This document shows positions 42,698 to 64,000 of a stretch of DNA of 64,000 bases, in pieces. The DNA comes from Paragordius varius (Eukaryota > Animalia > Nematomorpha). Both the position numbers and the translations under genes were made by a program. Numbering within the stretch: position 1 is the first letter of the stretch; every line of letters starts with the position of its first letter. The notes beneath the pieces were generated by a model. The model saw only the letters and a program-made list of their open reading frames with translations, did no database searches and had not been told where the DNA came from. The stretch is from positions 8,556,001 to 8,620,000 of the forward strand of contig OZ176050.1 of the NCBI GenBank assembly GCA_964247055.1, read 5' to 3'.

Positions 42698-45600
42698 CCA
42701 TCCATCATCCATCCATTCATTTTAGGTCCCAGGGTATCTGGGGTTTCCATGCACCAACTTCCTGAACAATGTCCTATCAAAGACTTGTTCGTGTTCAATA
42801 TTGAAGTGTGATAGATCTTGGGTCAGCTGTTTGGACCATGTGAGCTTAGGGCGGCCTTTTCTGTTTGGGCCGGGTATATTTAAATGTTGTATTTTTTGGA
42901 CCCAGTTATCGGAATTCATACGTTGAATATGTCCGTAATATCGCAATCGATTGCGCTGGATGAATAAAGCTATGGGTTCATCTTCTTCTATGGTATTATC
43001 AAAATTATTGTTGCAGATTTTGAGCATGTGATTTTCAGCTCTAGTAAGTCTATTTAGGTCTGTTGCTGTAAGGGCCCAGGTTTCTGTAGCGTATGTCATA
43101 GCTGGTCTTATTCCCATTTTGTAAATCTTTATCTTGTGATTCGATTTGATATATTTATTAGTTAAAATATATTTTAATTGATTGAATTTGGCCCATCCTT
43201 GTCTGATTCTATGAGAAATGGCATCCCTCAAAGAACCATCAGATGCTATATAATTGCCCAGATATGGGAAAGATGTTACCACTTCTAGTTTATCTCCATT
43301 AAAGTTTATAGTACGTGGATTTGATATTGGCTGTGGTATTGATGAAGCACATGGTGTGCAGATGAAATTATTATTATTAATTAACTTTCCTTTTATGTTG
43401 GAACATTTTTTATGGACCCAATTTCTACATTTTGTACAACAAAGTGAGTTTAGTTTTACCTCAGTGGTGCACACTGGGCATGGGAACTTTATAGTTTTAT
43501 GTTCATCTCCTGTGATTAGAATTTTAGTTTTGTTTGTATTGATTTTAAGACCGTATTTATGCAATTGTTTTGACCATATAAGATATTTATTTTCGAGTAT
43601 TGAAATATCTTCTGCAGTGATTATGAGGTCGTCTGCATAAAGAATTTCATAAGGCAGACCTTCTCTCATATCTTTTGTTATGTAATCAATTATAGCTATA
43701 AAAAGAAGTGGGCTAAGGACAGATCCCTGATGTAGCCCAGTATTTATACTAAAATACTCTGAATTCCCAACAGGAGTAAGAACACAACTGATTGAGTTAG
43801 TGTAGATTAACATAATTAACTTAATGGTATATTCATCTACGTTGTTGTAGCGCAGTGATTCTATTATTAGTGCTCTAGGTACTGAGTCGTAAGCCTTTTC
43901 TAAATCGACAAAAAGGTGGAATAGTTTACGACCTTTTGCTCGGTATTTATCTTGTAATTGTCTGAGTAGGAAAATTGGATCGATTGTGCTTTTGCCCGCT
44001 GAAAAGGCGAATTGCATTGGATTAATTGATATGAGCTGGACGATACGATTTTTGAGGCACATTTCAAAAATTTTTAACCCATGTTCAAGAAGTTTTAAGG
44101 GCCTGTATGAGGAACAGGTTAAGATATCTCCTTTATTTTTGAAAATGGGAAATATAATGCTTTTTTCCCAGTCTTTGGGTATTTTCATTTCAACTATTAT
44201 TTTGTTAAATAAATTTGTTAGAAGCATGGTTATATTGGGTATTAATTTAATGATATCAAAACATAGTTCACTAGGGCCCGAAGCCTTGTTTGATTTCATT
44301 TGGTCTAAAGCAATCTCAATTTCTTGTATTGTGAATGTATTTAATGGGCCACAACAGGGATCTAGGTCAGAATTTATTATGGGTGTTAAAGGGTTGTTTA
44401 GATTTTGCTCCATATATTTTTGCCATATCGATTTAATTAATTCTGGTTGTATTTGTAAATTATTATTATTATCTTTTATATATTTAATCGTTGGTATATC
44501 TTTTTTGTTATTATTGTAAAGTTTCATATGTTTAAAAATTTTATTATTTTGGATTTCCTTTTCCAATTTATCGGCAGTATCTTTAGCCTTTTCATTCATT
44601 AATTTATTAATTTCCTTTTGAACCTTTTTGTTGTATTTATAATAATCAGTTTTGTCGTTTTCTGTTTTCGATTTCTTCCATTTTTTATACAAACGCGCCT
44701 TTTCTTTAAGTAATGGCTTAATTGCATCGTCCCACCACCATTTCTTTTGGGCTTTGCTCTTTCTTCTACCACACCATTTTTCTACATTTTCAATCGTATT
44801 GCTTCTTAGACTTTGCCAGGAGTCTTCAACGTCAAGATTATCAATGTTTAAGTTAAGCGACTTTTTGAAATTATTCATTATATCAGGTTTTTTAAACTTG
44901 TGTATATTAAGTTTAGGTTTGGTTCTATGATTAAAAGGCCTTGAGTTAAATTTGAAAATTGATGTTAAAACTTTATGCTGTGTTTCAGAGTTATAAGTGG
45001 TTGTATTTACCAGATATTTTCGAATGTGTTGACTAGTTAGGATGTAGTCTATTGTTGTATTATTATTGCCAGAAGTGTATGTAATCAGTTTATTTTTGCT
45101 TTTGGTGAATAAAGTGTTTGCTAACTGTAGTCGCTGAGCTGCACAGAATTCTAAGACATTTTCTCCTTCTTTGTCCCGATTATCGAAGTTGTATCCTCCA
45201 TGTATACCAGAAAAACCTTCGCTGCTTCCAACATGTGCATTTAAATCTCCTCCAATCATTATACAGTCTGTTTCGGGTATATTGGAACATATTTGATAGA
45301 GCTGATCCCAAAAATCCAGCTTGCATTTATCGGGCAAGCCTTTTTGGGGTGCATATACGGAAATAATATTGAGGATCAATTTGTTGTATATCATTCTAGC
45401 TTGAATAATTCTATCACTGTGACGGGTCACGGTAATTAGGTTTTGTCGATGTGTTTCTTTCATCATTATAACGACGCCAGATTGTCCTTTGTTCCCACCT
45501 TGGTATAGTAATGAATAACCATCAAAGTGTTTTATACCTGCATTTTTATATCGAGTTTCTTGTAAACAGCATATGTTTAAATCTAAGTTTCGCACCGTAT

Positions 45601-46110
45601 CTATTACCAGCCATTGCTTATTAACCATTGTTCCAACATTCCAAGAGCCAATTTTAAATGGTTCCGATATAGATTTGAAGTTTTTATTTAGATTATTGTA
45701 TCTTATTTTTATTTTTGGTTGTTCATTTGTACCTGGTTTATTTATTATTGTTTTAGAATTATTTTTATTTCTATTATTTATGTAATTTGTATTTATAGGT
45801 ATACTAGCATTATCATAATATATATTATCATTTATATTAAAATTAAAATTTCGTTTTGAAATAGAGGTTTTATTATCATCAATCATTTTTGTAAGTCGTT
45901 TCTTCATGGTTTTGTAATTTGAGGCAAGGTTTTACGGATTATATGCCCTTATAAACCAACCCCTTTAACTCAGAGGTGAGGGTACCTTATTCGCTGCACC
46001 AGGCTAGAGAATGTCTAAAAAGACTACGATTTTCTCAAATCGACCTCCTCCGTTGGCCTTACACATCGTGTAAGTTTCCGGACATCACCACGTGGAGGTG
46101 GAGGTAGGAT
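42698..46110 (-). mobile_element. Non-LTR retrotransposon (RTE-like), apparently full length
   Basis: Single EN-RT ORF, ~200-bp 5' UTR with an AAGGGCAT...CCGTAAAACC motif (recalled as RTE-like) and a very short 3' UTR ending in a (TGGA)n-type tail at 42698-42720. 5' boundary is approximate and no TSD was found. Confidence 0.85.
42722..45907 (-). CDS. LINE ORF: AP endonuclease + reverse transcriptase + PHD finger (1061 aa, uninterrupted)
   Basis: Endonuclease motifs GSWNV, CLQETR, GGDLNAHVG and IDYIL; RT motifs YRPLKLL, FVDLEKAYDSV, GLHQGSVLSPLLF and YADD; C4HC3 finger CPVC..CTKC..WVHKKC..CTPC. Confidence 0.95.
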   Translation of the reverse strand: MKKRLTKMIDDNKTSISKRNFNFNINDNIYYDNASIPINTNYINNRNKNNSKTIINKPGTNEQPKIKIRYNNLNKNFKSISEPFKIGSWNVGTMVNKQWLVIDTVRNLDLNICCLQETRYKNAGIKHFDGYSLLYQGGNKGQSGVVIMMKETHRQNLITVTRHSDRIIQARMIYNKLILNIISVYAPQKGLPDKCKLDFWDQLYQICSNIPETDCIMIGGDLNAHVGSSEGFSGIHGGYNFDNRDKEGENVLEFCAAQRLQLANTLFTKSKNKLITYTSGNNNTTIDYILTSQHIRKYLVNTTTYNSETQHKVLTSIFKFNSRPFNHRTKPKLNIHKFKKPDIMNNFKKSLNLNIDNLDVEDSWQSLRSNTIENVEKWCGRRKSKAQKKWWWDDAIKPLLKEKARLYKKWKKSKTENDKTDYYKYNKKVQKEINKLMNEKAKDTADKLEKEIQNNKIFKHMKLYNNNKKDIPTIKYIKDNNNNLQIQPELIKSIWQKYMEQNLNNPLTPIINSDLDPCCGPLNTFTIQEIEIALDQMKSNKASGPSELCFDIIKLIPNITMLLTNLFNKIIVEMKIPKDWEKSIIFPIFKNKGDILTCSSYRPLKLLEHGLKIFEMCLKNRIVQLISINPMQFAFSAGKSTIDPIFLLRQLQDKYRAKGRKLFHLFVDLEKAYDSVPRALIIESLRYNNVDEYTIKLIMLIYTNSISCVLTPVGNSEYFSINTGLHQGSVLSPLLFIAIIDYITKDMREGLPYEILYADDLIITAEDISILENKYLIWSKQLHKYGLKINTNKTKILITGDEHKTIKFPCPVCTTEVKLNSLCCTKCRNWVHKKCSNIKGKLINNNNFICTPCASSIPQPISNPRTINFNGDKLEVVTSFPYLGNYIASDGSLRDAISHRIRQGWAKFNQLKYILTNKYIKSNHKIKIYKMGIRPAMTYATETWALTATDLNRLTRAENHMLKICNNNFDNTIEEDEPIALFIQRNRLRYYGHIQRMNSDNWVQKIQHLNIPGPNRKGRPKLTWSKQLTQDLSHFNIEHEQVFDRTLFRKLVHGNPRYPGT

Positions 46111-55500: not shown

Positions 55501-58500
55501 TTAAACATTATATCTATAAAATTCAATGCTGCTAAAGATCACCTTTGGTTGTAAACAATATCGTTCGTCTTAAAATTTGGTTTCATAATAAAACTAACGA
55601 ATTTTTTAATTAAAATTATGAGAGGTTTTCAACAAAAAAATTTTATTCGTTATAAAAAAGAAATATGGAATATATACGCATGTGGCTGTATGTATTGTGC
55701 ATTAACTTGATTTCGATTAAAGTTTGAAAGGTTGGGCGTATAAACTGATGAATCTAATATATAATAAATTTAATTTTGTAAAAAATGAAAATTAATAATC
55801 TTAATTCATATAGATTTATTACAAATTAAAAATACCTTGTAACCACCTAACTTGGGTAGCTGGCCCGTAACCTTTTTCGTTTTTAGCAGCAATACGAAAA
55901 ATTATAGCGGGTTTATTTGATGATGAAGATATATCTATTTGTGCATTGGATAAGATTGTATTATGGACAAGGCAGGAGGGCGATTGTCCTGAATAAACTC
56001 GAACAAATTGTAATTGACTATTGCTTGAACTTGTTTTAGGGGTTGGGAAAGAATTACTTAGGTTCAAAATTGAAATATATAAAAAATATAGATTTAATAA
56101 TATGTAATTAGAAACTTGACTAGCAATGTCTTACACATAATTATTGTTTTTAGATAAAATGTTTCATGGGTATGTCGTAAAATTGGATGAAAATTAAAAT
56201 AAAAAGTATTAAACCTTTATAAATTACACTGATTTTTAGCATTAGTTATACTTTTTTTAAAAATATAAAATATTAACTAAATACAATTATATTCAATTAA
56301 AATAGCCGATGTGACGGATATTTTAATATTTTTTAATAAACTGTCCTAAATTATAATTTAAGAAACGTATAATTACATAAAAATTTAGTATTAAAAATAA
56401 AATTTTACTTTATTTGATTGCGTATGGCAAGATAAACCGAATATTCAACAATCTTTCCAGCACTATTTTGGGGTGGTTCCCAAGCTAAATTCGCTCCATC
56501 AACAGACTGTAATTATAATATAATGTTATAAATTCAATTTTCGCATAATATGTGGTTCTTTTCTATAATTTTAAAAACTTTCATACAACATTGATAAAAA
56601 TGTATGATTCATTATAAGCTTGAAATACTATGGATTTTTTCGTATTTGTTAACGTTGGAATTTGAAATCCATTGGGTCAAAAATAAAAAAAAATTATTAT
56701 AAGAATCTAAATCAGGTATCGGTATTGCCAAAATTCAGAATATTGCTTCTACAAAAAGTTTTTATCAATTTATTATTTATTGTGCATAACAAAACGAGAA
56801 CACATACGTTAGTGAAAATTTAATTTTTAAAAACATAACAAAGGTCATGCATATTTAAAAAACCATAATTTTAACAAGTAATTTTTCAAATAAAACCTAC
56901 CGTTTTGGGTTGAAATATGAAGAATAGAGATGTATATATTGGTAACAAATTTTAAAATTTTAATAATATAGTTTATGTAAAAAAATCAATGGGAATGACT
57001 ATTTAAATGCAAAAAACTTTGTCTTTACGTTTTAATGCTTTTTCTTTGTAATTTCTATTGTATTAAAAACAAACTTTTCACAAAAAAATAGAAAGAAATG
57101 AATGAATATAGTTCATTTGTCTCATATTTTTGAATTAAATGTATTAATATTTTATAAACTATTCATATTTTGCTTAGTATTTTCAAACACAAAAATTTAA
57201 GTAAAACATCCTTCTTAACCAAAATTCGCAGTCTACTAATTCAACAATTTATTTTGTAAAGAAAGACAACCCTTACTTTAGTAATTTTTATGGATGAAGG
57301 CGCTCCAGGAAATCCTGGAACGCATGTTTTGAAGGCCGCAACCTCGGACCAAGGACCCCTACCGCAGGCATTTATCGCGGCAACTCGAAATTTATAAGCC
57401 GTGGCAGGTAACAGGTTTTGGGTAATGTAAGTGTTGGATGTTTCATCGTCGTTTTCTGTGTGGCTTGCGGGTAGGCTTGAATCGAATGATGTCTAAAAGG
57501 TAATATGTGGAGTTTTAAATGTGAAGAAATTTCGGTCAAATAAACATTTAAGAATGAGTTATTTTATATATATTTAAAAATCTGTTAAATTTTATAAAAA
57601 GGTAATGCGTGGATGCGTAAATTGGGCCAAGTACAAATAATAAAAAATCAATTTTATGCGACGTATGAAATACAAATTTATATTAACCTTGTAGTTTTCA
57701 CATATTGTTAAAAAATATAACTAAAATTTTGGCTAAATAAACTTAAGATATGGAATAAATACTCCAAAAATCATTTGAAAATAAGGCCTATTATATTTTT
57801 ATCAATGATGTTTTTTAGTATTTAATAGCATAACATATTTTACCAAGTGATTGAGTTTAATTTTGTAATTTGTGACTAGACAGGTGTTTAGAGGTGTTAT
57901 GCAAATGTCATGCCAATCGTCAGCATCTTTGTCCGTATCTTCGCTTTTTATTGTCTATAATAGATATATTAATTTTGTAAAAAAACCTGAGATGGCGATT
58001 TAACTTCATTCGTTTTTTGAGATGGGCCTAAAACACAAAAAAAGAATTATAAATATCTTGTGTGACATAAAATTTTTAAAAAAGTAAGTATAAATGAAAC
58101 AAAAGATGTGGGTAAACATTTAAGCCGGATAGTCTACCACAAAAAATCAACCCAAAAAACAATATATAATCTTAAACTGCAGTTAGAATTATCATTTGAT
58201 AAAACCAAACTTTACAAATGTATATTTAACTAAAACATAAAACCATAAACTATAAAATCTATGTAAATATGTGAATTATTTTTAGAGAGTTAGTAATTTA
58301 TTTATATTTGTTACTTTCTAAAATATAATATACAAATTATGGTAATAGCCAAACATATATTTCTGAATAAAATAACTTATAAAACAAAAACTTTTTGAGA
58401 TTTGAGTTTCTGTGGTCGTTGTTAGAGGTGTTGAAGATTGATTTATGGAACCAAAAATATTACTATTACCATTTAAATTATTGAGTTGACCACTTAAATC

Positions 58501-61500
58501 AATTAAACCGTTTGTTGTGTTATTTATGCTATTATTATTATTATTATTTAAATTGTTAAAAGTGGATGGTAATATTGAGGGTAAAATATCATCCAAAAGA
58601 GAGGAGGATGTTGGACTTCCCAAAATTTCATCGAATGGTAAAGCTTGGCCATTAACAAAAGATTTCGTGTCTAGGTAAGAAACACAGATTTATTAATAAG
58701 TATACTTATTTTTTTCTCGGATATTAAAAAAGAACAAATCTTTGATACTTCGTTAAATATTAATAAACTTTTTTGTTATTTGATATTCTTAACCAATGAA
58801 TTATACGTGGTTTAAGAATAAATTATAAAAGAGAATTTTATTTAAAACAAAATGCCATTTCATTATTTACTGATTAAACTATATATATTAATTACGATTT
58901 TTCTTAATATGCAATCTATTATTGTTATGCGAAAACGTAGATATTCATAATTTAAAGGATTAAAAAATACCTATAGGTGAAAAAAGACTATCAGGGAGAA
59001 TAAGATTTTCAGGAAGCGTAAGATTGCTTAACCCATTTGAATTTGCTAAATGTGGAGTTAAATTGCTGTTAATAATAGAGGTTGGCGTTAAAGATGAAAT
59101 TTTAGGGCTGATAGAATTAATAGCATTGACATTATTTTCAACTTGATTACTCGTTGAATCATTATTTTTAAGGGAAGATATTATTCGATCGATCGCTATG
59201 TTAGCCTCTGTCGTGCTCGTTAAATTTAGTGTATTTGGTCTAAATTACAGTAAAAATTAAAAAGTATATAAAGACAACAACTTATTTATATAAAGAAATT
59301 TTTTTTATTCTTTTGTAGCCTATTTAATTAGGATGTAAAAAATTATACTTTTTACTTAAATTTTTATAATAATATATCATGTTTAAAGATGTTGTTGTCA
59401 TATAATAAAATATTTTTGTACCAATTAAATAATAATATGTAACAAACAATTAAAATTTCGGTAATCCTTGAAATTATAATATTTACAAACATTAATTAAA
59501 TAATATCAAAGATAGGATATCCGTTTTTTAAAAAATAAAAATATCTATAAACAAAAACCTATTATTTGTATTGATGGTGGTCGATAAACTATTCGAGATA
59601 GTTGAAACAAGGGCGTCGCCGATTACCGAAACATTATTCGTTGTACCGTCAGTGGAAACATCCTTGACATTAATTAAACTTTGTCGTTCTTCAATGGTGT
59701 TTTCGACTTTTATTGATATGTTATCATTGGATTGCGCATTGTTATCGTTGCTTTCTGTGATGAATGGTAGCACAAATAAAATCCAATGATACATATTAAA
59801 TTTTTTTATTCATAATCTTTATATTACTTGGTAATTTGAAGCGATTTTTTACGTAACGCATGCCCTTGTGTACAATTAATGATTTTACAGATCATTAGAA
59901 ACTGGCCTTTGCCATTAGCGCATTTTCAAAGCCCAGCCAACACCGCGAGGAGGTGGAAACAGGAATGAGTTAATTAATTGATATGTGCAAGAATTCTATA
60001 AGTGAACCATTAAAGCAATTTATCCTTTAAAAATTCATAAAATTAGCGCGTAAGCTCTATAGTACTTATCAAATTTTTCAAAATATATCATAGATTTTCG
60101 CTGAATCATTACTATTTTTTAAAATATATAAAAAATAATTATTACCCGATGTTGTTTCAGTATTTTGGGAGGGTGAGGTTGGCGGTGTTCCACAATGAAT
60201 ACCATCATCGCATTTTTGTTTTGTATCTTGTTAATAAATAGTGTGCATAATTTATGACCATATTTTTGTAATTAAATACTGATTAAATTGATTTTTTTTA
60301 TTTAAGTTGATCATTTTATTATCAAAATAATTTTTTAAAAACTTTTTTAGTGAAATGTATAACTCTTAAACTTTAAAATTTGAATAATTACTTTGCGGTG
60401 AGCTAGGTGGTGTACCACAGTGTATTCCGTCATCGCACTTTTTATCAATAGATGCACCTTATCAAAACAAATTATTAGAAAAAATTTATTAAAAAAATAG
60501 TAATGTTCTTTTGTAAGCTAATTTATTTTACTTGATGTGCTGGGTGGAGTGCCACAATGTATACCATCATTGCATTTTTTATCATTAGATACATCTGGTA
60601 AAAACAAAACAATTGTGTAAATATTATATGCATGCCATTAAAATATTCGAAAATTGAAATTTCAAAATTTTATAAAAAATTTAATTCTATTTACTTGGTG
60701 AGCCGGGTGGTGTACCACAGTGAATTCCATCTTCACATGTTGTGGTTTCTGAAATTATTTATTTTGGATATAAAGTATATATAAGGTCAATCGAAAATTA
60801 AGACATTTAGGATAAAGGTAACAATACTATTAAATCACTTAAATATATTAATTATATTTGCAAATTTATATATAAAATCAATATTTTCATATACTAATTA
60901 ATATAAATTATATAATATAATTTAAAACTTGATGGAACTTCTGAAGTGAGGATGGAATTCTTAGGTATTTTGTTAGTATTGTCAGGAAGTGTAATCTAAA
61001 ATAAATTTAAACAAAATAGTTAAATTATATATATACATTATTGTAATATAATTACTTAAAAATATTTAGTAAATTATATTTATCATCGTATCCAAAAATT
61101 AAATTATATGATAAAAACTTTTTTAGTTTCTATGAGATTAGATGCATTGTTGGAGACAATAGGTTTGGCGATTTGTTGTTTAACGTTAAATACGTTAGGA
61201 TTATTAACTAGTTTGAGTGTAGAAGCCACGGTTGTATTATTTGATGTGTTTGTAGGAGGATTCATTAACTTTATGAAGGTTGCTCCCTGTGGTATATTTA
61301 TGATACCTTTACCCTAAAAAGTTAATAATTAACTGATATAACATCATTAATTTATATAAATATGTCTTTATGGATAAATAATGTTAAATAATTTAAGCAT
61401 TTTTCGCAAGATTGACCCTATCATAATTATAAAACATCAAGTTCGATTTGTATTATTATTTGGGTATGACATATAGGTTACTTACCTATATATCTTTTAA

Positions 61501-62773: not shown

Positions 62774-64000
62774 ATATAAAACCTATTTGATTACGATTTG
62801 TGATATAAGAAATAAAGATAAGAATTGCCAAGACAATAATTTTTAATATAACAATTGTAATCAAAAATAGTTTTCTTAAAAAACGTAAGTTTTTTAATTT
62901 TCATGTGTCTTGATAATTTTCTATTTTCCTTGTAAATAATTAAATTTGGAATATAAATTACACTGGACAACAAATTTTTTCTGCCACTCGAGTTTTTTGA
63001 ATTTTCTGATATTTAGTATCATTTTAACAGTAAATCTGAAATAAAAATTATAACTCGTTGGAAGAATTTTGTATAATTTAAATTTATTGATTATGCGCCC
63101 TCTTTATAAAAATTTTACTAAAAAATATTTTTCTTTGAAAATATAAAGGTAATGCCCGTTTGTAATATATCATTCGAAAGAGTAATAAAAACTCTATAAT
63201 ATGCATACTAATATGTATTACATCGACAGTTTATTGGACACAAAGAGCGACAAACGCGCGAAGCGAGAGCATTTTTTTTAATTATTATATTTTTAAAACT
63301 AATGGATGAAAATAGCTCAAACTTTGTTTAGATGGTGATGAATGTCCAAAAAAGATAACACAAGAAAGTTTTTTTGATTAAAACATTTTTTTATTGCTTT
63401 TATGTCACTCAAAACAGCCATTTTTAAGTTTTTTGTTTTTTTAAAAATTACCATCTCATCAATATTAATTTATTTTCTTTACAAGGCTGATAATTTCGAA
63501 ATTTTAAAGATAGAAACAAAGTTTAAGGTATTTTTGATCTTTTATAGCCATTATATAATAAATTTACAGTTATAACTATGCATTTTAGTATCCACTAGGT
63601 AAAATATTTATTATATTTTTAATTTTTATTAAAAAAGCAAACCAAAAACTTTTTCAAACATTTTTTTTAAATTAAATACTAATATAACCCTAATAATTAT
63701 ATTAAAATAATTTATATGATTTTTAAATTAGTTTGTCTGTAAAATTCTTGACTTATTCAGGATTTGAAAATTTCGACCATTTAAATCCAAATAACTTTTA
63801 CATCCGAGTGATTTAAATGACTTACTCCCATTTAAAAGATGCAGTTTTTTGCGCTCTTTCGAATGATATAAAATACATGGCTTCATATTTAAAACTTTTA
63901 ATTTTCGAAATTTCGAGTTTAATGTTAAATCGTGGCCAAAAATTATCGATAAACTCTAATATAAAAATATTCTTCCATGCTAGACCAATTTTCTTTTCAG

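What the first reader, a model, noticed from the sequence alone, without database searches (positions are those of the whole stretch)
60146..60748. Invertebrate HCF with its own exon-encoded repeat array (4x C[12 protein letters not shown]/T) in the central processing region
Seen: four separate minus-strand exons (60748-60695, 60594-60532, 60457-60392, 60226-60146) translate to [54 protein letters not shown] and [19 protein letters not shown]. In the DGIHCGTPP core, 8 of 9 codons vary between copies and every change is synonymous, which indicates purifying selection on the peptide. All exons are phase 1-1 and multiples of 3, so copy number can change by duplication or skipping. Established: vertebrate HCF-1 has 26-aa HCF-1PRO repeats (CSNPPCETHETGT) at this position, between the basic region and the C-terminal FN3, cleaved by OGT; Drosophila HCF is cut by Taspase1; the PRO repeats are considered vertebrate-specific. 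Inference: this could be an independently evolved processing or regulatory module. Each unit contains T-P-P-x-[S/T], followed by Pro in 3 of 4, matching the GSK3/Fbw7 phosphodegron pattern of Myc T58/S62. It also has an invariant D-G dipeptide (but not the full Taspase1 QxD/GxDD site) and a C-x4-H-C possible metal ligand set. I know of no description of this motif.
Basis: partly seen in the sequence, partly recalled or inferred. Interest (0 to 1): 0.82.

Follow-up and report, generated by a model that had tools for sequence, protein, structure and literature searches.

The report
Widespread Cys-His peptide repeat in HCF
Four small exons of this invertebrate's HCF gene each encode one copy of a short cysteine-histidine peptide (C-x-D-G-I-H-C-G-T); this is not a private invention but an apparently undescribed repeat found in HCF and other proteins of many invertebrate phyla, at the place where vertebrate HCF-1 carries its OGT-cleaved repeats.

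Summary
Four minus-strand exons (54, 63, 66 and 81 nt, AG/GT-bounded, phase 1-1) each encode C[10 protein letters not shown]. At least 10 codon changes lie in the 9-codon core, and all are synonymous. The motif occurs nowhere else in the 110.6 Mb genome. The gene is HCF: Kelch_HCF exons lie upstream and Fn3 exons downstream.

The core C-x-D-G-x-H-C-[GN]-[T/E] forms tandem arrays of 2-34 copies in the central linker of HCF from ticks, spiders, horseshoe crabs, heterodont bivalves and a nemertean. It also occurs in MAP1-like, HDAC6, SNAPC4 and XK-related proteins, and in several proteins with no recognised domain. Other molluscs and amphioxus carry C-x5-C/His variants in the same part of HCF. 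These units never co-occur with Taspase1-type sites or PRO repeats.

No Pfam model covers the motif, and no paper in the searchable library prints it. No RNA data were available.

The function is inferred. The most likely reading is a metal- or redox-binding Cys/His mini-loop that acts as a multivalent docking module. The main rival is a third class of HCF maturation signal. The TPPxS phosphodegron idea rests on flanks specific to this species.

The parts
60695..60748 (-). Repeat exon 1 (54 nt, phase 1-1), encodes [17 protein letters not shown]
   Evidence: AG acceptor and GTAAAT donor
60532..60594 (-). Repeat exon 2 (63 nt, phase 1-1), encodes ...[17 protein letters not shown]
   Evidence: aligned by tblastn to a Limulus HCF repeat
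60392..60457 (-). Repeat exon 3 (66 nt, phase 1-1), encodes ...[18 protein letters not shown]
   Evidence: aligned by tblastn to a Limulus HCF repeat
60146..60226 (-). Repeat exon 4 (81 nt, phase 1-1), encodes ...[19 protein letters not shown]...
60929..60995 (-). Proposed upstream exon (67 nt; starts in phase 0, ends in phase 1) that would join repeat exon 1 through a Lys codon. Its donor is weak (GTTTTA).
   Evidence: inferred from frame and splice signals only
61119..61313 (-). Central-linker coding stretch upstream (open frame, N/S/T-rich). Its proposed end at 61119 has a weak GTTTTT donor; its 5' boundary is not determined.
   Evidence: inferred
59531..59754 (-). Downstream linker exon. 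The acceptor at 59754 is in phase 1 and joins exon 4 through a Glu codon. The 3' end is not determined.
   Evidence: inferred
57277..57474 (-). HCF C-terminal Fn3 exon ([10 protein letters not shown]... block)
   Evidence: Pfam fn3 7e-08; tblastn 64-85% identity to arthropod HCFs
56417..56509 (-). HCF C-terminal Fn3 exon
   Evidence: tblastn, 61-65% identity
55822..56088 (-). Last conserved HCF Fn3c exon
   Evidence: tblastn, 62-64% identity

Best explanation
Shown: the four exons are coding exons of this animal's single HCF gene. They encode four copies of a peptide repeat that is widespread in animals and, as far as I could search, undescribed. Its core is C-x-D-G-x-H-C-[G/N]-[T/E]. In HCF the repeat sits in the disordered central linker, in the same position as in chelicerate, bivalve and nemertean HCF. 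It is therefore most simply an inherited HCF feature that here has been split into one repeat per exon.

Inferred mechanism: each unit is a seven-residue Cys-x5-Cys loop with a D-G turn and a His. It chelates a metal ion (most likely zinc), or forms a reversible disulfide, alone or together with neighbouring units. The array then gives the flexible linker a row of small metal- or redox-dependent knobs for multivalent docking of a partner. The Thr that follows is set in a Pro-directed context here and in a CK2-type acidic context in other lineages. It is replaced by Glu in some lineages, which makes it a likely phospho-switch beside each knob.

Confidence is about 0.9 for the identity part and about 0.4 for the mechanism.
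For: Exons and selection.

Gene identity and position.

The family:
- Seven metagenome contigs carry arrays of up to 17 copies.
- 63 database proteins have at least 2 units, giving 483 distinct units. C, D, G, H and C are 100% invariant, the next residue is G 88% or N 8%, and the one after is T 83% or E 12%. The periods are 12, 14 and 18 aa.

Hosts: HCF of ticks, spiders, horseshoe crabs, heterodont bivalves and a nemertean; MAP1-like proteins of echinoderms and hemichordates; a moth HDAC6; a sea-cucumber SNAPC4; a soft-coral XK-related protein.

What survives in the divergent HCF variants (oysters, caenogastropods, limpet, abalone, amphioxus) is the C-x5-C spacing plus His (Glu in abalone), not the D-G. 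That pattern fits ligand geometry better than a protease P1/P1' site.

HCF linkers without such units are almost free of Cys, 0-1 residues.

AlphaFold2 gives no fold without a ligand (pLDDT 49.5), as expected for a linear or metal-dependent motif.
Against: - No experiment or structure shows metal binding.
- One unit offers three or four ligands with His and Cys adjacent, which is an unusual geometry.
- AlphaFold2 gave no hint of a knuckle.
- The strict invariance of D-G in 483 units is also what a D/G-cutting protease would impose.
- The units replace Taspase1 sites and PRO repeats in the same part of HCF and never co-occur with them, which points towards processing.
- Splicing and expression of the four exons were not observed.
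Confidence: 0.4

Rival explanations
1. A third class of HCF proteolytic maturation signal. The units would be cut, at D|G by a Taspase-like or other protease or next to the first Cys. This would yield N- and C-terminal HCF subunits, as Taspase1 does in Drosophila and OGT does in vertebrates.
For: The units occupy the same linker position as PRO repeats and Taspase1 sites (literature). Among 143 HCF-family proteins, 46 carry Cys-His units, 13 carry Q-[FILVM]-D-G-x-x-[DE] sites and 23 carry PRO-type P-P-C-E, with no overlap. There are switches within gastropods, within arthropods, and between annelids and nemerteans. This HCF has no canonical Taspase1 site within any single exon. D-G is invariant.
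Against: Arrays of up to 34 units with a 12-aa period, and hosts such as HDAC6, SNAPC4 and XK-related proteins, look more like a binding module than a cut site. Variants in amphioxus, limpet and abalone lack D-G. Many HCFs have none of the three elements. P3, P2, P3' and P4' do not fit the Taspase1 consensus. The counts are not phylogenetically independent, and selected for the motif.
Confidence: 0.22
2. An OGT docking or O-GlcNAc acceptor module related by descent to the vertebrate HCF-1PRO repeat. P-P-C-T in the bivalve and tick arrays would be the glycosylated counterpart of P-P-C-E.
For: The host protein and linker position are the same. Bivalve and tick arrays read ...T-P-P-P-C-T-D-G..., resembling the engineered E10S acceptor described in PMC4840301. 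The amphioxus unit aligns as P-C-x-T-x-H-x-x-G-T with the PRO core. Invertebrate OGTs keep residues needed only for PRO cleavage. A sea star HCF has a true PRO-like element, so PRO-type sequence predates vertebrates.
Against: Alignment of the units to the PRO consensus is no better than for shuffled units: p is 0.05 for amphioxus and 0.1-1.0 for all others, including this genome. There is no Thr-rich tail. In this genome the residue after the first Cys is E, N, D and D, not Ser or Thr. Spider, coral and this genome's units lack the P-P before Cys.
Confidence: 0.1
3. One reading: each unit is a GSK3/Fbw7-type phosphodegron (T-P-P-x-S/T-P) that controls HCF turnover.
For: T-P-P-x-[S/T] is present in 4 of 4 units here and is followed by Pro in 3 of 4.
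Against: The +4 Ser/Thr is not conserved in the family, where the flanks are PPP-C, PEP-C, DDE, DSE or EEKE. The hydrophobic residue usually required within three positions before the Thr (degron consensus recalled from memory, not tested against a database) is absent here, where the sequence is H-C-G-T. Selection acts on C, D-G and H-C, not on the degron positions.
Confidence: 0.07
4. The four stretches are not expressed: chance open frames or decayed exons.
For: There is no RNA evidence. No annotated protein containing them was returned from the protein collection. The two upstream donors in my model are weak.
Against: Ten synonymous-only changes, GC islands, AG/GT boundaries and a preserved frame. 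A phase-matched downstream acceptor. Homologous units at the same place in other HCFs. Intron-free Logan contigs of other species encode units plus the HCF Fn3 in one open frame, which suggests expression there.
Confidence: 0.02

Closest known systems
HCF-1PRO repeats of vertebrate HCF-1 (cleaved by OGT)
   Same: Short Cys-containing peptide units, repeated in tandem in the central linker of the same protein, between the Kelch/Fn3n part and the C-terminal Fn3 part. The core is highly conserved and the spacers are variable.
   Different: The sequence differs: C-S-N-P-P-C-E-T-H-E-T-G-T-T against C-x-D-G-x-H-C-G-T, and the similarity is no better than for shuffled units. There is no Glu at a fixed cleavage position and no Thr-rich OGT-TPR-binding tail. 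The units also occur outside HCF. Here each unit has its own exon, whereas PRO repeats lie in one large exon.
Taspase1 cleavage sites (Drosophila HCF, MLL, TFIIA)
   Same: An invariant D-G dipeptide. In HCF the position in the linker is the same. The two elements are mutually exclusive across HCF orthologues.
   Different: The consensus Q-[FILV]-D/G-x-D-D is not met. P3 is Cys, P2 is polar or acidic, and P3' and P4' are His and Cys. Taspase1 sites occur once or twice, not in arrays of up to 34.
Small Cys/His metal-binding motifs (CCHC zinc knuckle, metallothionein-like Cys arrays)
   Same: Invariant Cys, His and Asp at fixed spacing in a very short unit, with Gly at turn positions. The units form tandem arrays in otherwise disordered sequence.
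   Different: The spacing C-x-D-G-x-H-C fits no described knuckle; CCHC, for example, is C-x2-C-x4-H-x4-C. There are only three or four candidate ligands per unit. No Pfam model matches. Metal binding has not been tested.
Fbw7/GSK3 phosphodegron (Myc T58/S62 type)
   Same: T-P-P-x-S/T(-P) follows the core in the four units of this genome.
   Different: This pattern is not conserved in the repeat family. The upstream hydrophobic position is missing.

Membership tests
HCF (host cell factor) gene | N-terminal HCF-type Kelch propeller | tested here: met
   Five exons just beyond the window's end (L002) match Pfam Kelch_HCF colinearly at profile positions 3-49, 50-102, 100-160, 151-222 and 287-336, each at E 1e-22 to 1e-28. 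tblastn gives 56-87% identity to arthropod HCFs.
HCF (host cell factor) gene | C-terminal Fn3 pair in the same gene, colinear with the N-terminal part | tested here: met
   Pfam fn3 at E 7e-08. Three C-terminal exons align at 61-85% identity to HCF residues in the right order.
C-x-D-G-x-H-C-G repeat family (defined here) | Core C-x-D-G-x-H-C-[G/N] followed by T or E | tested here: met
   4 of 4 units. The family profile comes from 483 units.
C-x-D-G-x-H-C-G repeat family (defined here) | At least two tandem copies with a period of about 12-28 residues in a low-complexity linker | tested here: met
   The exon lengths give periods of 18, 21 and 22 residues between the four units, with an N/S/T-rich linker on both sides.
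C-x-D-G-x-H-C-G repeat family (defined here) | In HCF: located between Fn3n and Fn3c, as in chelicerate, bivalve and nemertean HCF | tested here: met
   tblastn places Limulus HCF residues 1229-1251 on exons 2 and 3, between the Fn3n and Fn3c exons.
HCF-1PRO repeat | Core C-S-N-P-P-C-E-T-H-E-T-G-T-T with Glu at the scissile position and a Thr-rich tail | tested here: not met
   The pattern is absent. Local alignment of the units to the PRO consensus is no better than for shuffles, p 0.15-0.5.
HCF-1PRO repeat | Cleavage or binding by OGT | not testable with these tools
   This needs an in vitro OGT assay.
Taspase1 substrate site | Q-[FILV]-D/G-x-D-D | tested here: not met
   Only D-G is present. 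No [QE]-[FILVM]-D-G-x-x-[DE] occurs in any minus-strand frame from 54000 to 74000 in extended coordinates. A site spanning an exon junction would have been missed.
Fbw7/GSK3 phosphodegron | T-P-P-x-[S/T] with a hydrophobic residue within 3 positions upstream, conserved in orthologues | tested here: not met
   T-P-P-x-[S/T] is present in 4 of 4 units, but the upstream residues are H-C-G, and the +4 Ser/Thr is not conserved in the family. The degron consensus is taken from memory.
CCHC zinc knuckle | C-x2-C-x4-H-x4-C spacing; Pfam zf-CCHC match | tested here: not met
   The spacing is different, and no Pfam family matches the arrays at E <= 1.

The most novel reading that the evidence does not exclude
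The C-x-D-G-x-H-C-G units, and their C-x5-C/His variants in molluscs and amphioxus, are an ancient third class of HCF maturation or enzyme-docking signal. They would have been present in HCF of the protostome ancestor at least, and repeatedly exchanged for Taspase1 sites (flies, barnacles, annelids, heterobranch snails) or for PRO repeats (vertebrates). The same signal would mark MAP1, HDAC6, SNAPC4 and XK-related proteins for the same unknown enzyme or partner. Together with the PRO-like element in a sea star HCF, this would overturn the view that invertebrate HCF linkers have no repeat module and that the PRO repeat appeared from nowhere in vertebrates.
Probability: 0.2. Interest if true: 0.85.

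Novelty: new variant of a known kind. Interest (0 to 1): 0.62.

Why it matters
HCF-1 is a textbook case of convergent proteolytic maturation, by OGT in vertebrates and by Taspase1 in flies. The published view (PMC4840301, PMC6582346) is that the repeat module is limited to vertebrates and that invertebrate linkers are non-conserved.

The evidence here shows that many invertebrate HCFs carry their own tandem Cys-His units at that place. Eight positions are essentially invariant from cnidarian proteins to arthropods. The units are mutually exclusive with the two known signals.

That gives HCF and OGT researchers a concrete, testable candidate for how HCF is regulated or processed in ticks, spiders, bivalves and this animal. 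It also defines a short motif shared by otherwise unrelated proteins, which implies a common but unknown partner, metal or enzyme.

For this genome specifically, the one-repeat-per-exon, phase 1-1 layout would allow the copy number to vary by exon skipping.

Tried and rejected
Its 150 best hits were all giant multi-Fn3 proteins with no HCF among them, so it was uninformative.

2. RNA evidence: no run on record as RNA holds the stretch. Three small runs guessed to be RNA laid nothing, so splicing is unproven.

3. Viral origin: there were 0 matches to the motif pattern in viral contigs. The one hit in bacterial genomes is a single copy without the first Cys and looks like chance.

4. AlphaFold2 on a 12-unit array with a 9-row alignment gave mean pLDDT 49.5 and no secondary structure. 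This neither supports nor excludes a metal knuckle.

5. The ESM Atlas search had no usable feature hit. Its structural hits rest on a model with pLDDT 0.43 and are meaningless.

6. Exon structure of the repeats in a spider HCF gene could not be checked, because no DNA was served.

7. Homology of the units to the PRO repeat was not supported by the shuffle test.

8. Tandem exon-plus-intron duplication as a recent event was rejected, because the introns are unrelated.

9. A phase-1 GT[AG] donor from the 61107-61313 open frame was not found. A consistent path exists only through a 67-nt exon and two weak GTTTT donors.

Full report
OBSERVATION

Their lengths are 54, 63, 66 and 81 nt. Each is preceded by AG and followed by GTAA, and each reads in phase 1-1. 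They encode [14 protein letters not shown] followed by G-S-P, S-T-S, S-S-P and T-S-P.

Eight of the nine core codons differ between copies. The minimum of 10 changes is entirely synonymous, with P about 8e-7 for random single-base changes.

The back-translated core, and a looser C-x-D-G-x-H-C-G pattern, occur only at these four places in the 110.6 Mb genome.

The exons are GC islands of about 41% in introns of 15-18% GC, and the three introns between them are unrelated to each other. The copies are therefore old, and the peptide is kept by selection.

A low-coverage DNA contig labelled as another organism covers exons 1-2. It has three intron changes and one synonymous exon change.

No RNA run holds the stretch, so splicing itself remains unobserved.

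THE GENE

The window is G000:C1:8556001-8620000.

- Just beyond its end, five exons match Pfam Kelch_HCF colinearly.
- Inside the window, an exon matches fn3.
- tblastn with three arthropod HCFs maps Kelch, Fn3n and three Fn3c exons in order.
- The same search aligns two repeats of the horseshoe-crab HCF to exons 2 and 3.

The array therefore lies in the central linker of HCF.

A phase-matched acceptor at 59754 continues the frame downstream. Upstream, a 67-nt exon (60995-60929) continues it, though through weak GTTTT donors.

No Taspase1 consensus and no PRO-type sequence occur in any minus-strand frame of the gene region.

THE MOTIF IS NOT PRIVATE TO THIS ANIMAL

Scanning public metagenome contigs for the back-translated core gave seven contigs with tandem arrays of up to 17 copies at 12-15 residue periods.

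- Three of them are bivalve HCF genes, with the whole array in one open frame.
- One is a MAP1B homologue (Pfam MBL_MAP1B, E 1e-93).
- Two encode a Gln/Pro-rich protein.

These open frames served as references for three word-index protein searches. The searches returned arrays from the following hosts:

- HCF of ticks (Ixodes, Amblyomma, Dermacentor, Rhipicephalus), with up to 25 units in one protein.
- HCF of horseshoe crabs and of many spiders.
- HCF of heterodont bivalves (Ruditapes, Mya, Mactra, Mercenaria, Dreissena).
- HCF of the nemertean Tubulanus.
- MAP1-like proteins of sea stars, sea cucumbers and hemichordates.
- A moth HDAC6.
- A sea-cucumber SNAPC4.
- A soft-coral XK-related protein.
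- Several unnamed proteins.

Over 63 proteins and 483 distinct units, C, D, G, H and C are invariant. The next residue is G (88%) or N (8%), followed by T (83%) or E (12%). After that come PPP, PEP, DDE, DSE or EEKE. The commonest periods are 12, 14 and 18 residues.

The units of this genome fit that profile. Their T-P-P-x-S/T tail is a local version of T-P-P-P.

No insect HCF, and no protein of this genome, was returned by the motif search, whose length window was 832-2648 residues.

VARIANTS AND MUTUAL EXCLUSION IN HCF

Other HCF orthologues carry different but clearly patterned C-x5-C units at the same place:

- C-T-D-G-H-N-C-P in oysters, a pearl oyster and a unionid.
- E-C-D-G-[IV]-H-G-C-P-G in caenogastropods.
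- D-C-G-T-P-H-G-C-P-G in a limpet.
- D-C-G-R-P-E-G-C-G-T-P-P-P in abalone and Gigantopelta.
- P-C-G-T-I-H-G-C-G-T-D-D-E in amphioxus.

The 143 HCF-family proteins in hand fall into these classes:

| Class | Proteins |
|---|---|
| Strict unit | 29 |
| Variant unit | 16 |
| Both strict and variant | 1 |
| Taspase1-type Q-[FILVM]-D-G-x-x-[DE] (annelids, heterobranch snails, a barnacle) | 13 |
| PRO-type P-P-C-E | 23 |
| None of these | 61 |

No protein combines a Cys-His unit with a Taspase1-type or PRO-type element. HCF linkers without units are nearly free of Cys.

These counts are not phylogenetically independent, and one of the searches selected for the motif.

WHAT IS KNOWN

The Herr laboratory papers state that the PRO repeat is present only in vertebrate HCF-1 and lies in a single large exon. 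They also state that fly HCF is cut by Taspase1, that Trichoplax HCF has no evident site, and that the linker between Fn3n and Fn3c is non-conserved (PMC4840301; PMC6582346).

Twelve fragments of the units, searched as substrings in about 8.4 million full texts, gave no paper. Pfam has no model for the arrays. I therefore regard the repeat family as undescribed within what I could search.

MECHANISM

Nothing here shows function; what follows is inference.

The residues under absolute constraint are two Cys at fixed spacing, a His, an Asp and two Gly. In the divergent variants the C-x5-C spacing and the His (or Glu) survive, while the D-G does not. The units form dense arrays in disordered linkers of unrelated proteins.

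This fits best a small metal- or redox-dependent loop used as a multivalent docking element. The Thr beside it would be phosphorylatable: it sits in a Pro-directed context here, in a CK2-type context in spiders, and is replaced by Glu in horseshoe crabs and the nemertean. I put this reading at about 0.4.

The main rival, at about 0.22, is a third kind of HCF maturation signal. It is suggested by the shared position in the linker, the exclusion pattern and the invariant D-G.

Descent from, or kinship with, the PRO repeat is not supported by a shuffle test, so I put it at about 0.1.

AlphaFold2 predicted no structure for a 12-unit array (pLDDT 49.5), which does not discriminate between these readings.

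CONTEXT

Notes of other agents on this genome call it a horsehair-worm-type genome with ultra-short introns. I did not test this. In my own comparison, its HCF is about equally distant (68-74% over conserved exons) from chelicerate, mollusc and amphioxus HCFs.

If that placement is right, the units occur in Nematoida, Chelicerata and Spiralia. They were then most simply present in HCF of the protostome ancestor.

VERDICT

It is wrong that the module is independent or unique. The value of the finding lies in the family it belongs to.

Noticed in passing
P0204 (Patiria miniata HCF) residues 985-1005: A single vertebrate-type HCF-1PRO-like element, C-E-N-P-P-C-E-K-F-E-T-..-N-T. It shares 11 of 21 residues with the vertebrate consensus (score 61 against 25 +/- 5 for shuffles). 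The literature places PRO repeats only in vertebrates; other echinoderm HCFs in the set lack it.
   Followed up: partly
P0159, P0167, P0170, P0171, P0176, P0197 and relatives (HCF of molluscs and amphioxus): Lineage-specific C-x5-C/His repeat variants, 6-17 copies each, sit in the HCF central linker at the place of the strict units.
   Followed up: partly
L005, P0153, P0289, P0298, P0299, P0304, P0305, P0323, P0313, P0152: The same units, often with N instead of G after the second Cys, form arrays in several non-HCF proteins: directly after the MBL-like domain of MAP1-like proteins of echinoderms and hemichordates, between the deacetylase and zf-UBP domains of a moth HDAC6, in a sea-cucumber SNAPC4, and in the C-terminal tail of a soft-coral XK-related protein.
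   Followed up: partly
window 63000-64000: This stretch, inside a large HCF intron, is a dispersed repeat with at least 40 copies at 93-96% identity across the genome.
   Followed up: no
window 59841-59979: A GC-richer island in the intron after repeat exon 4 has very high contig depth (about 246) in the DNA run labelled organism B. It is probably a short dispersed repeat.
   Followed up: no
window 61119 and 60929 (minus strand): The only frame-consistent path into repeat exon 1 uses two donors reading GTTTT rather than GTAA. Either these are unusual donors or a small exon has been missed.
   Followed up: partly
window 42725-45931 (minus strand): An uninterrupted 1069-codon open frame lies in an otherwise intron-rich region. 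It was not examined; it may be a retroelement.
   Followed up: no
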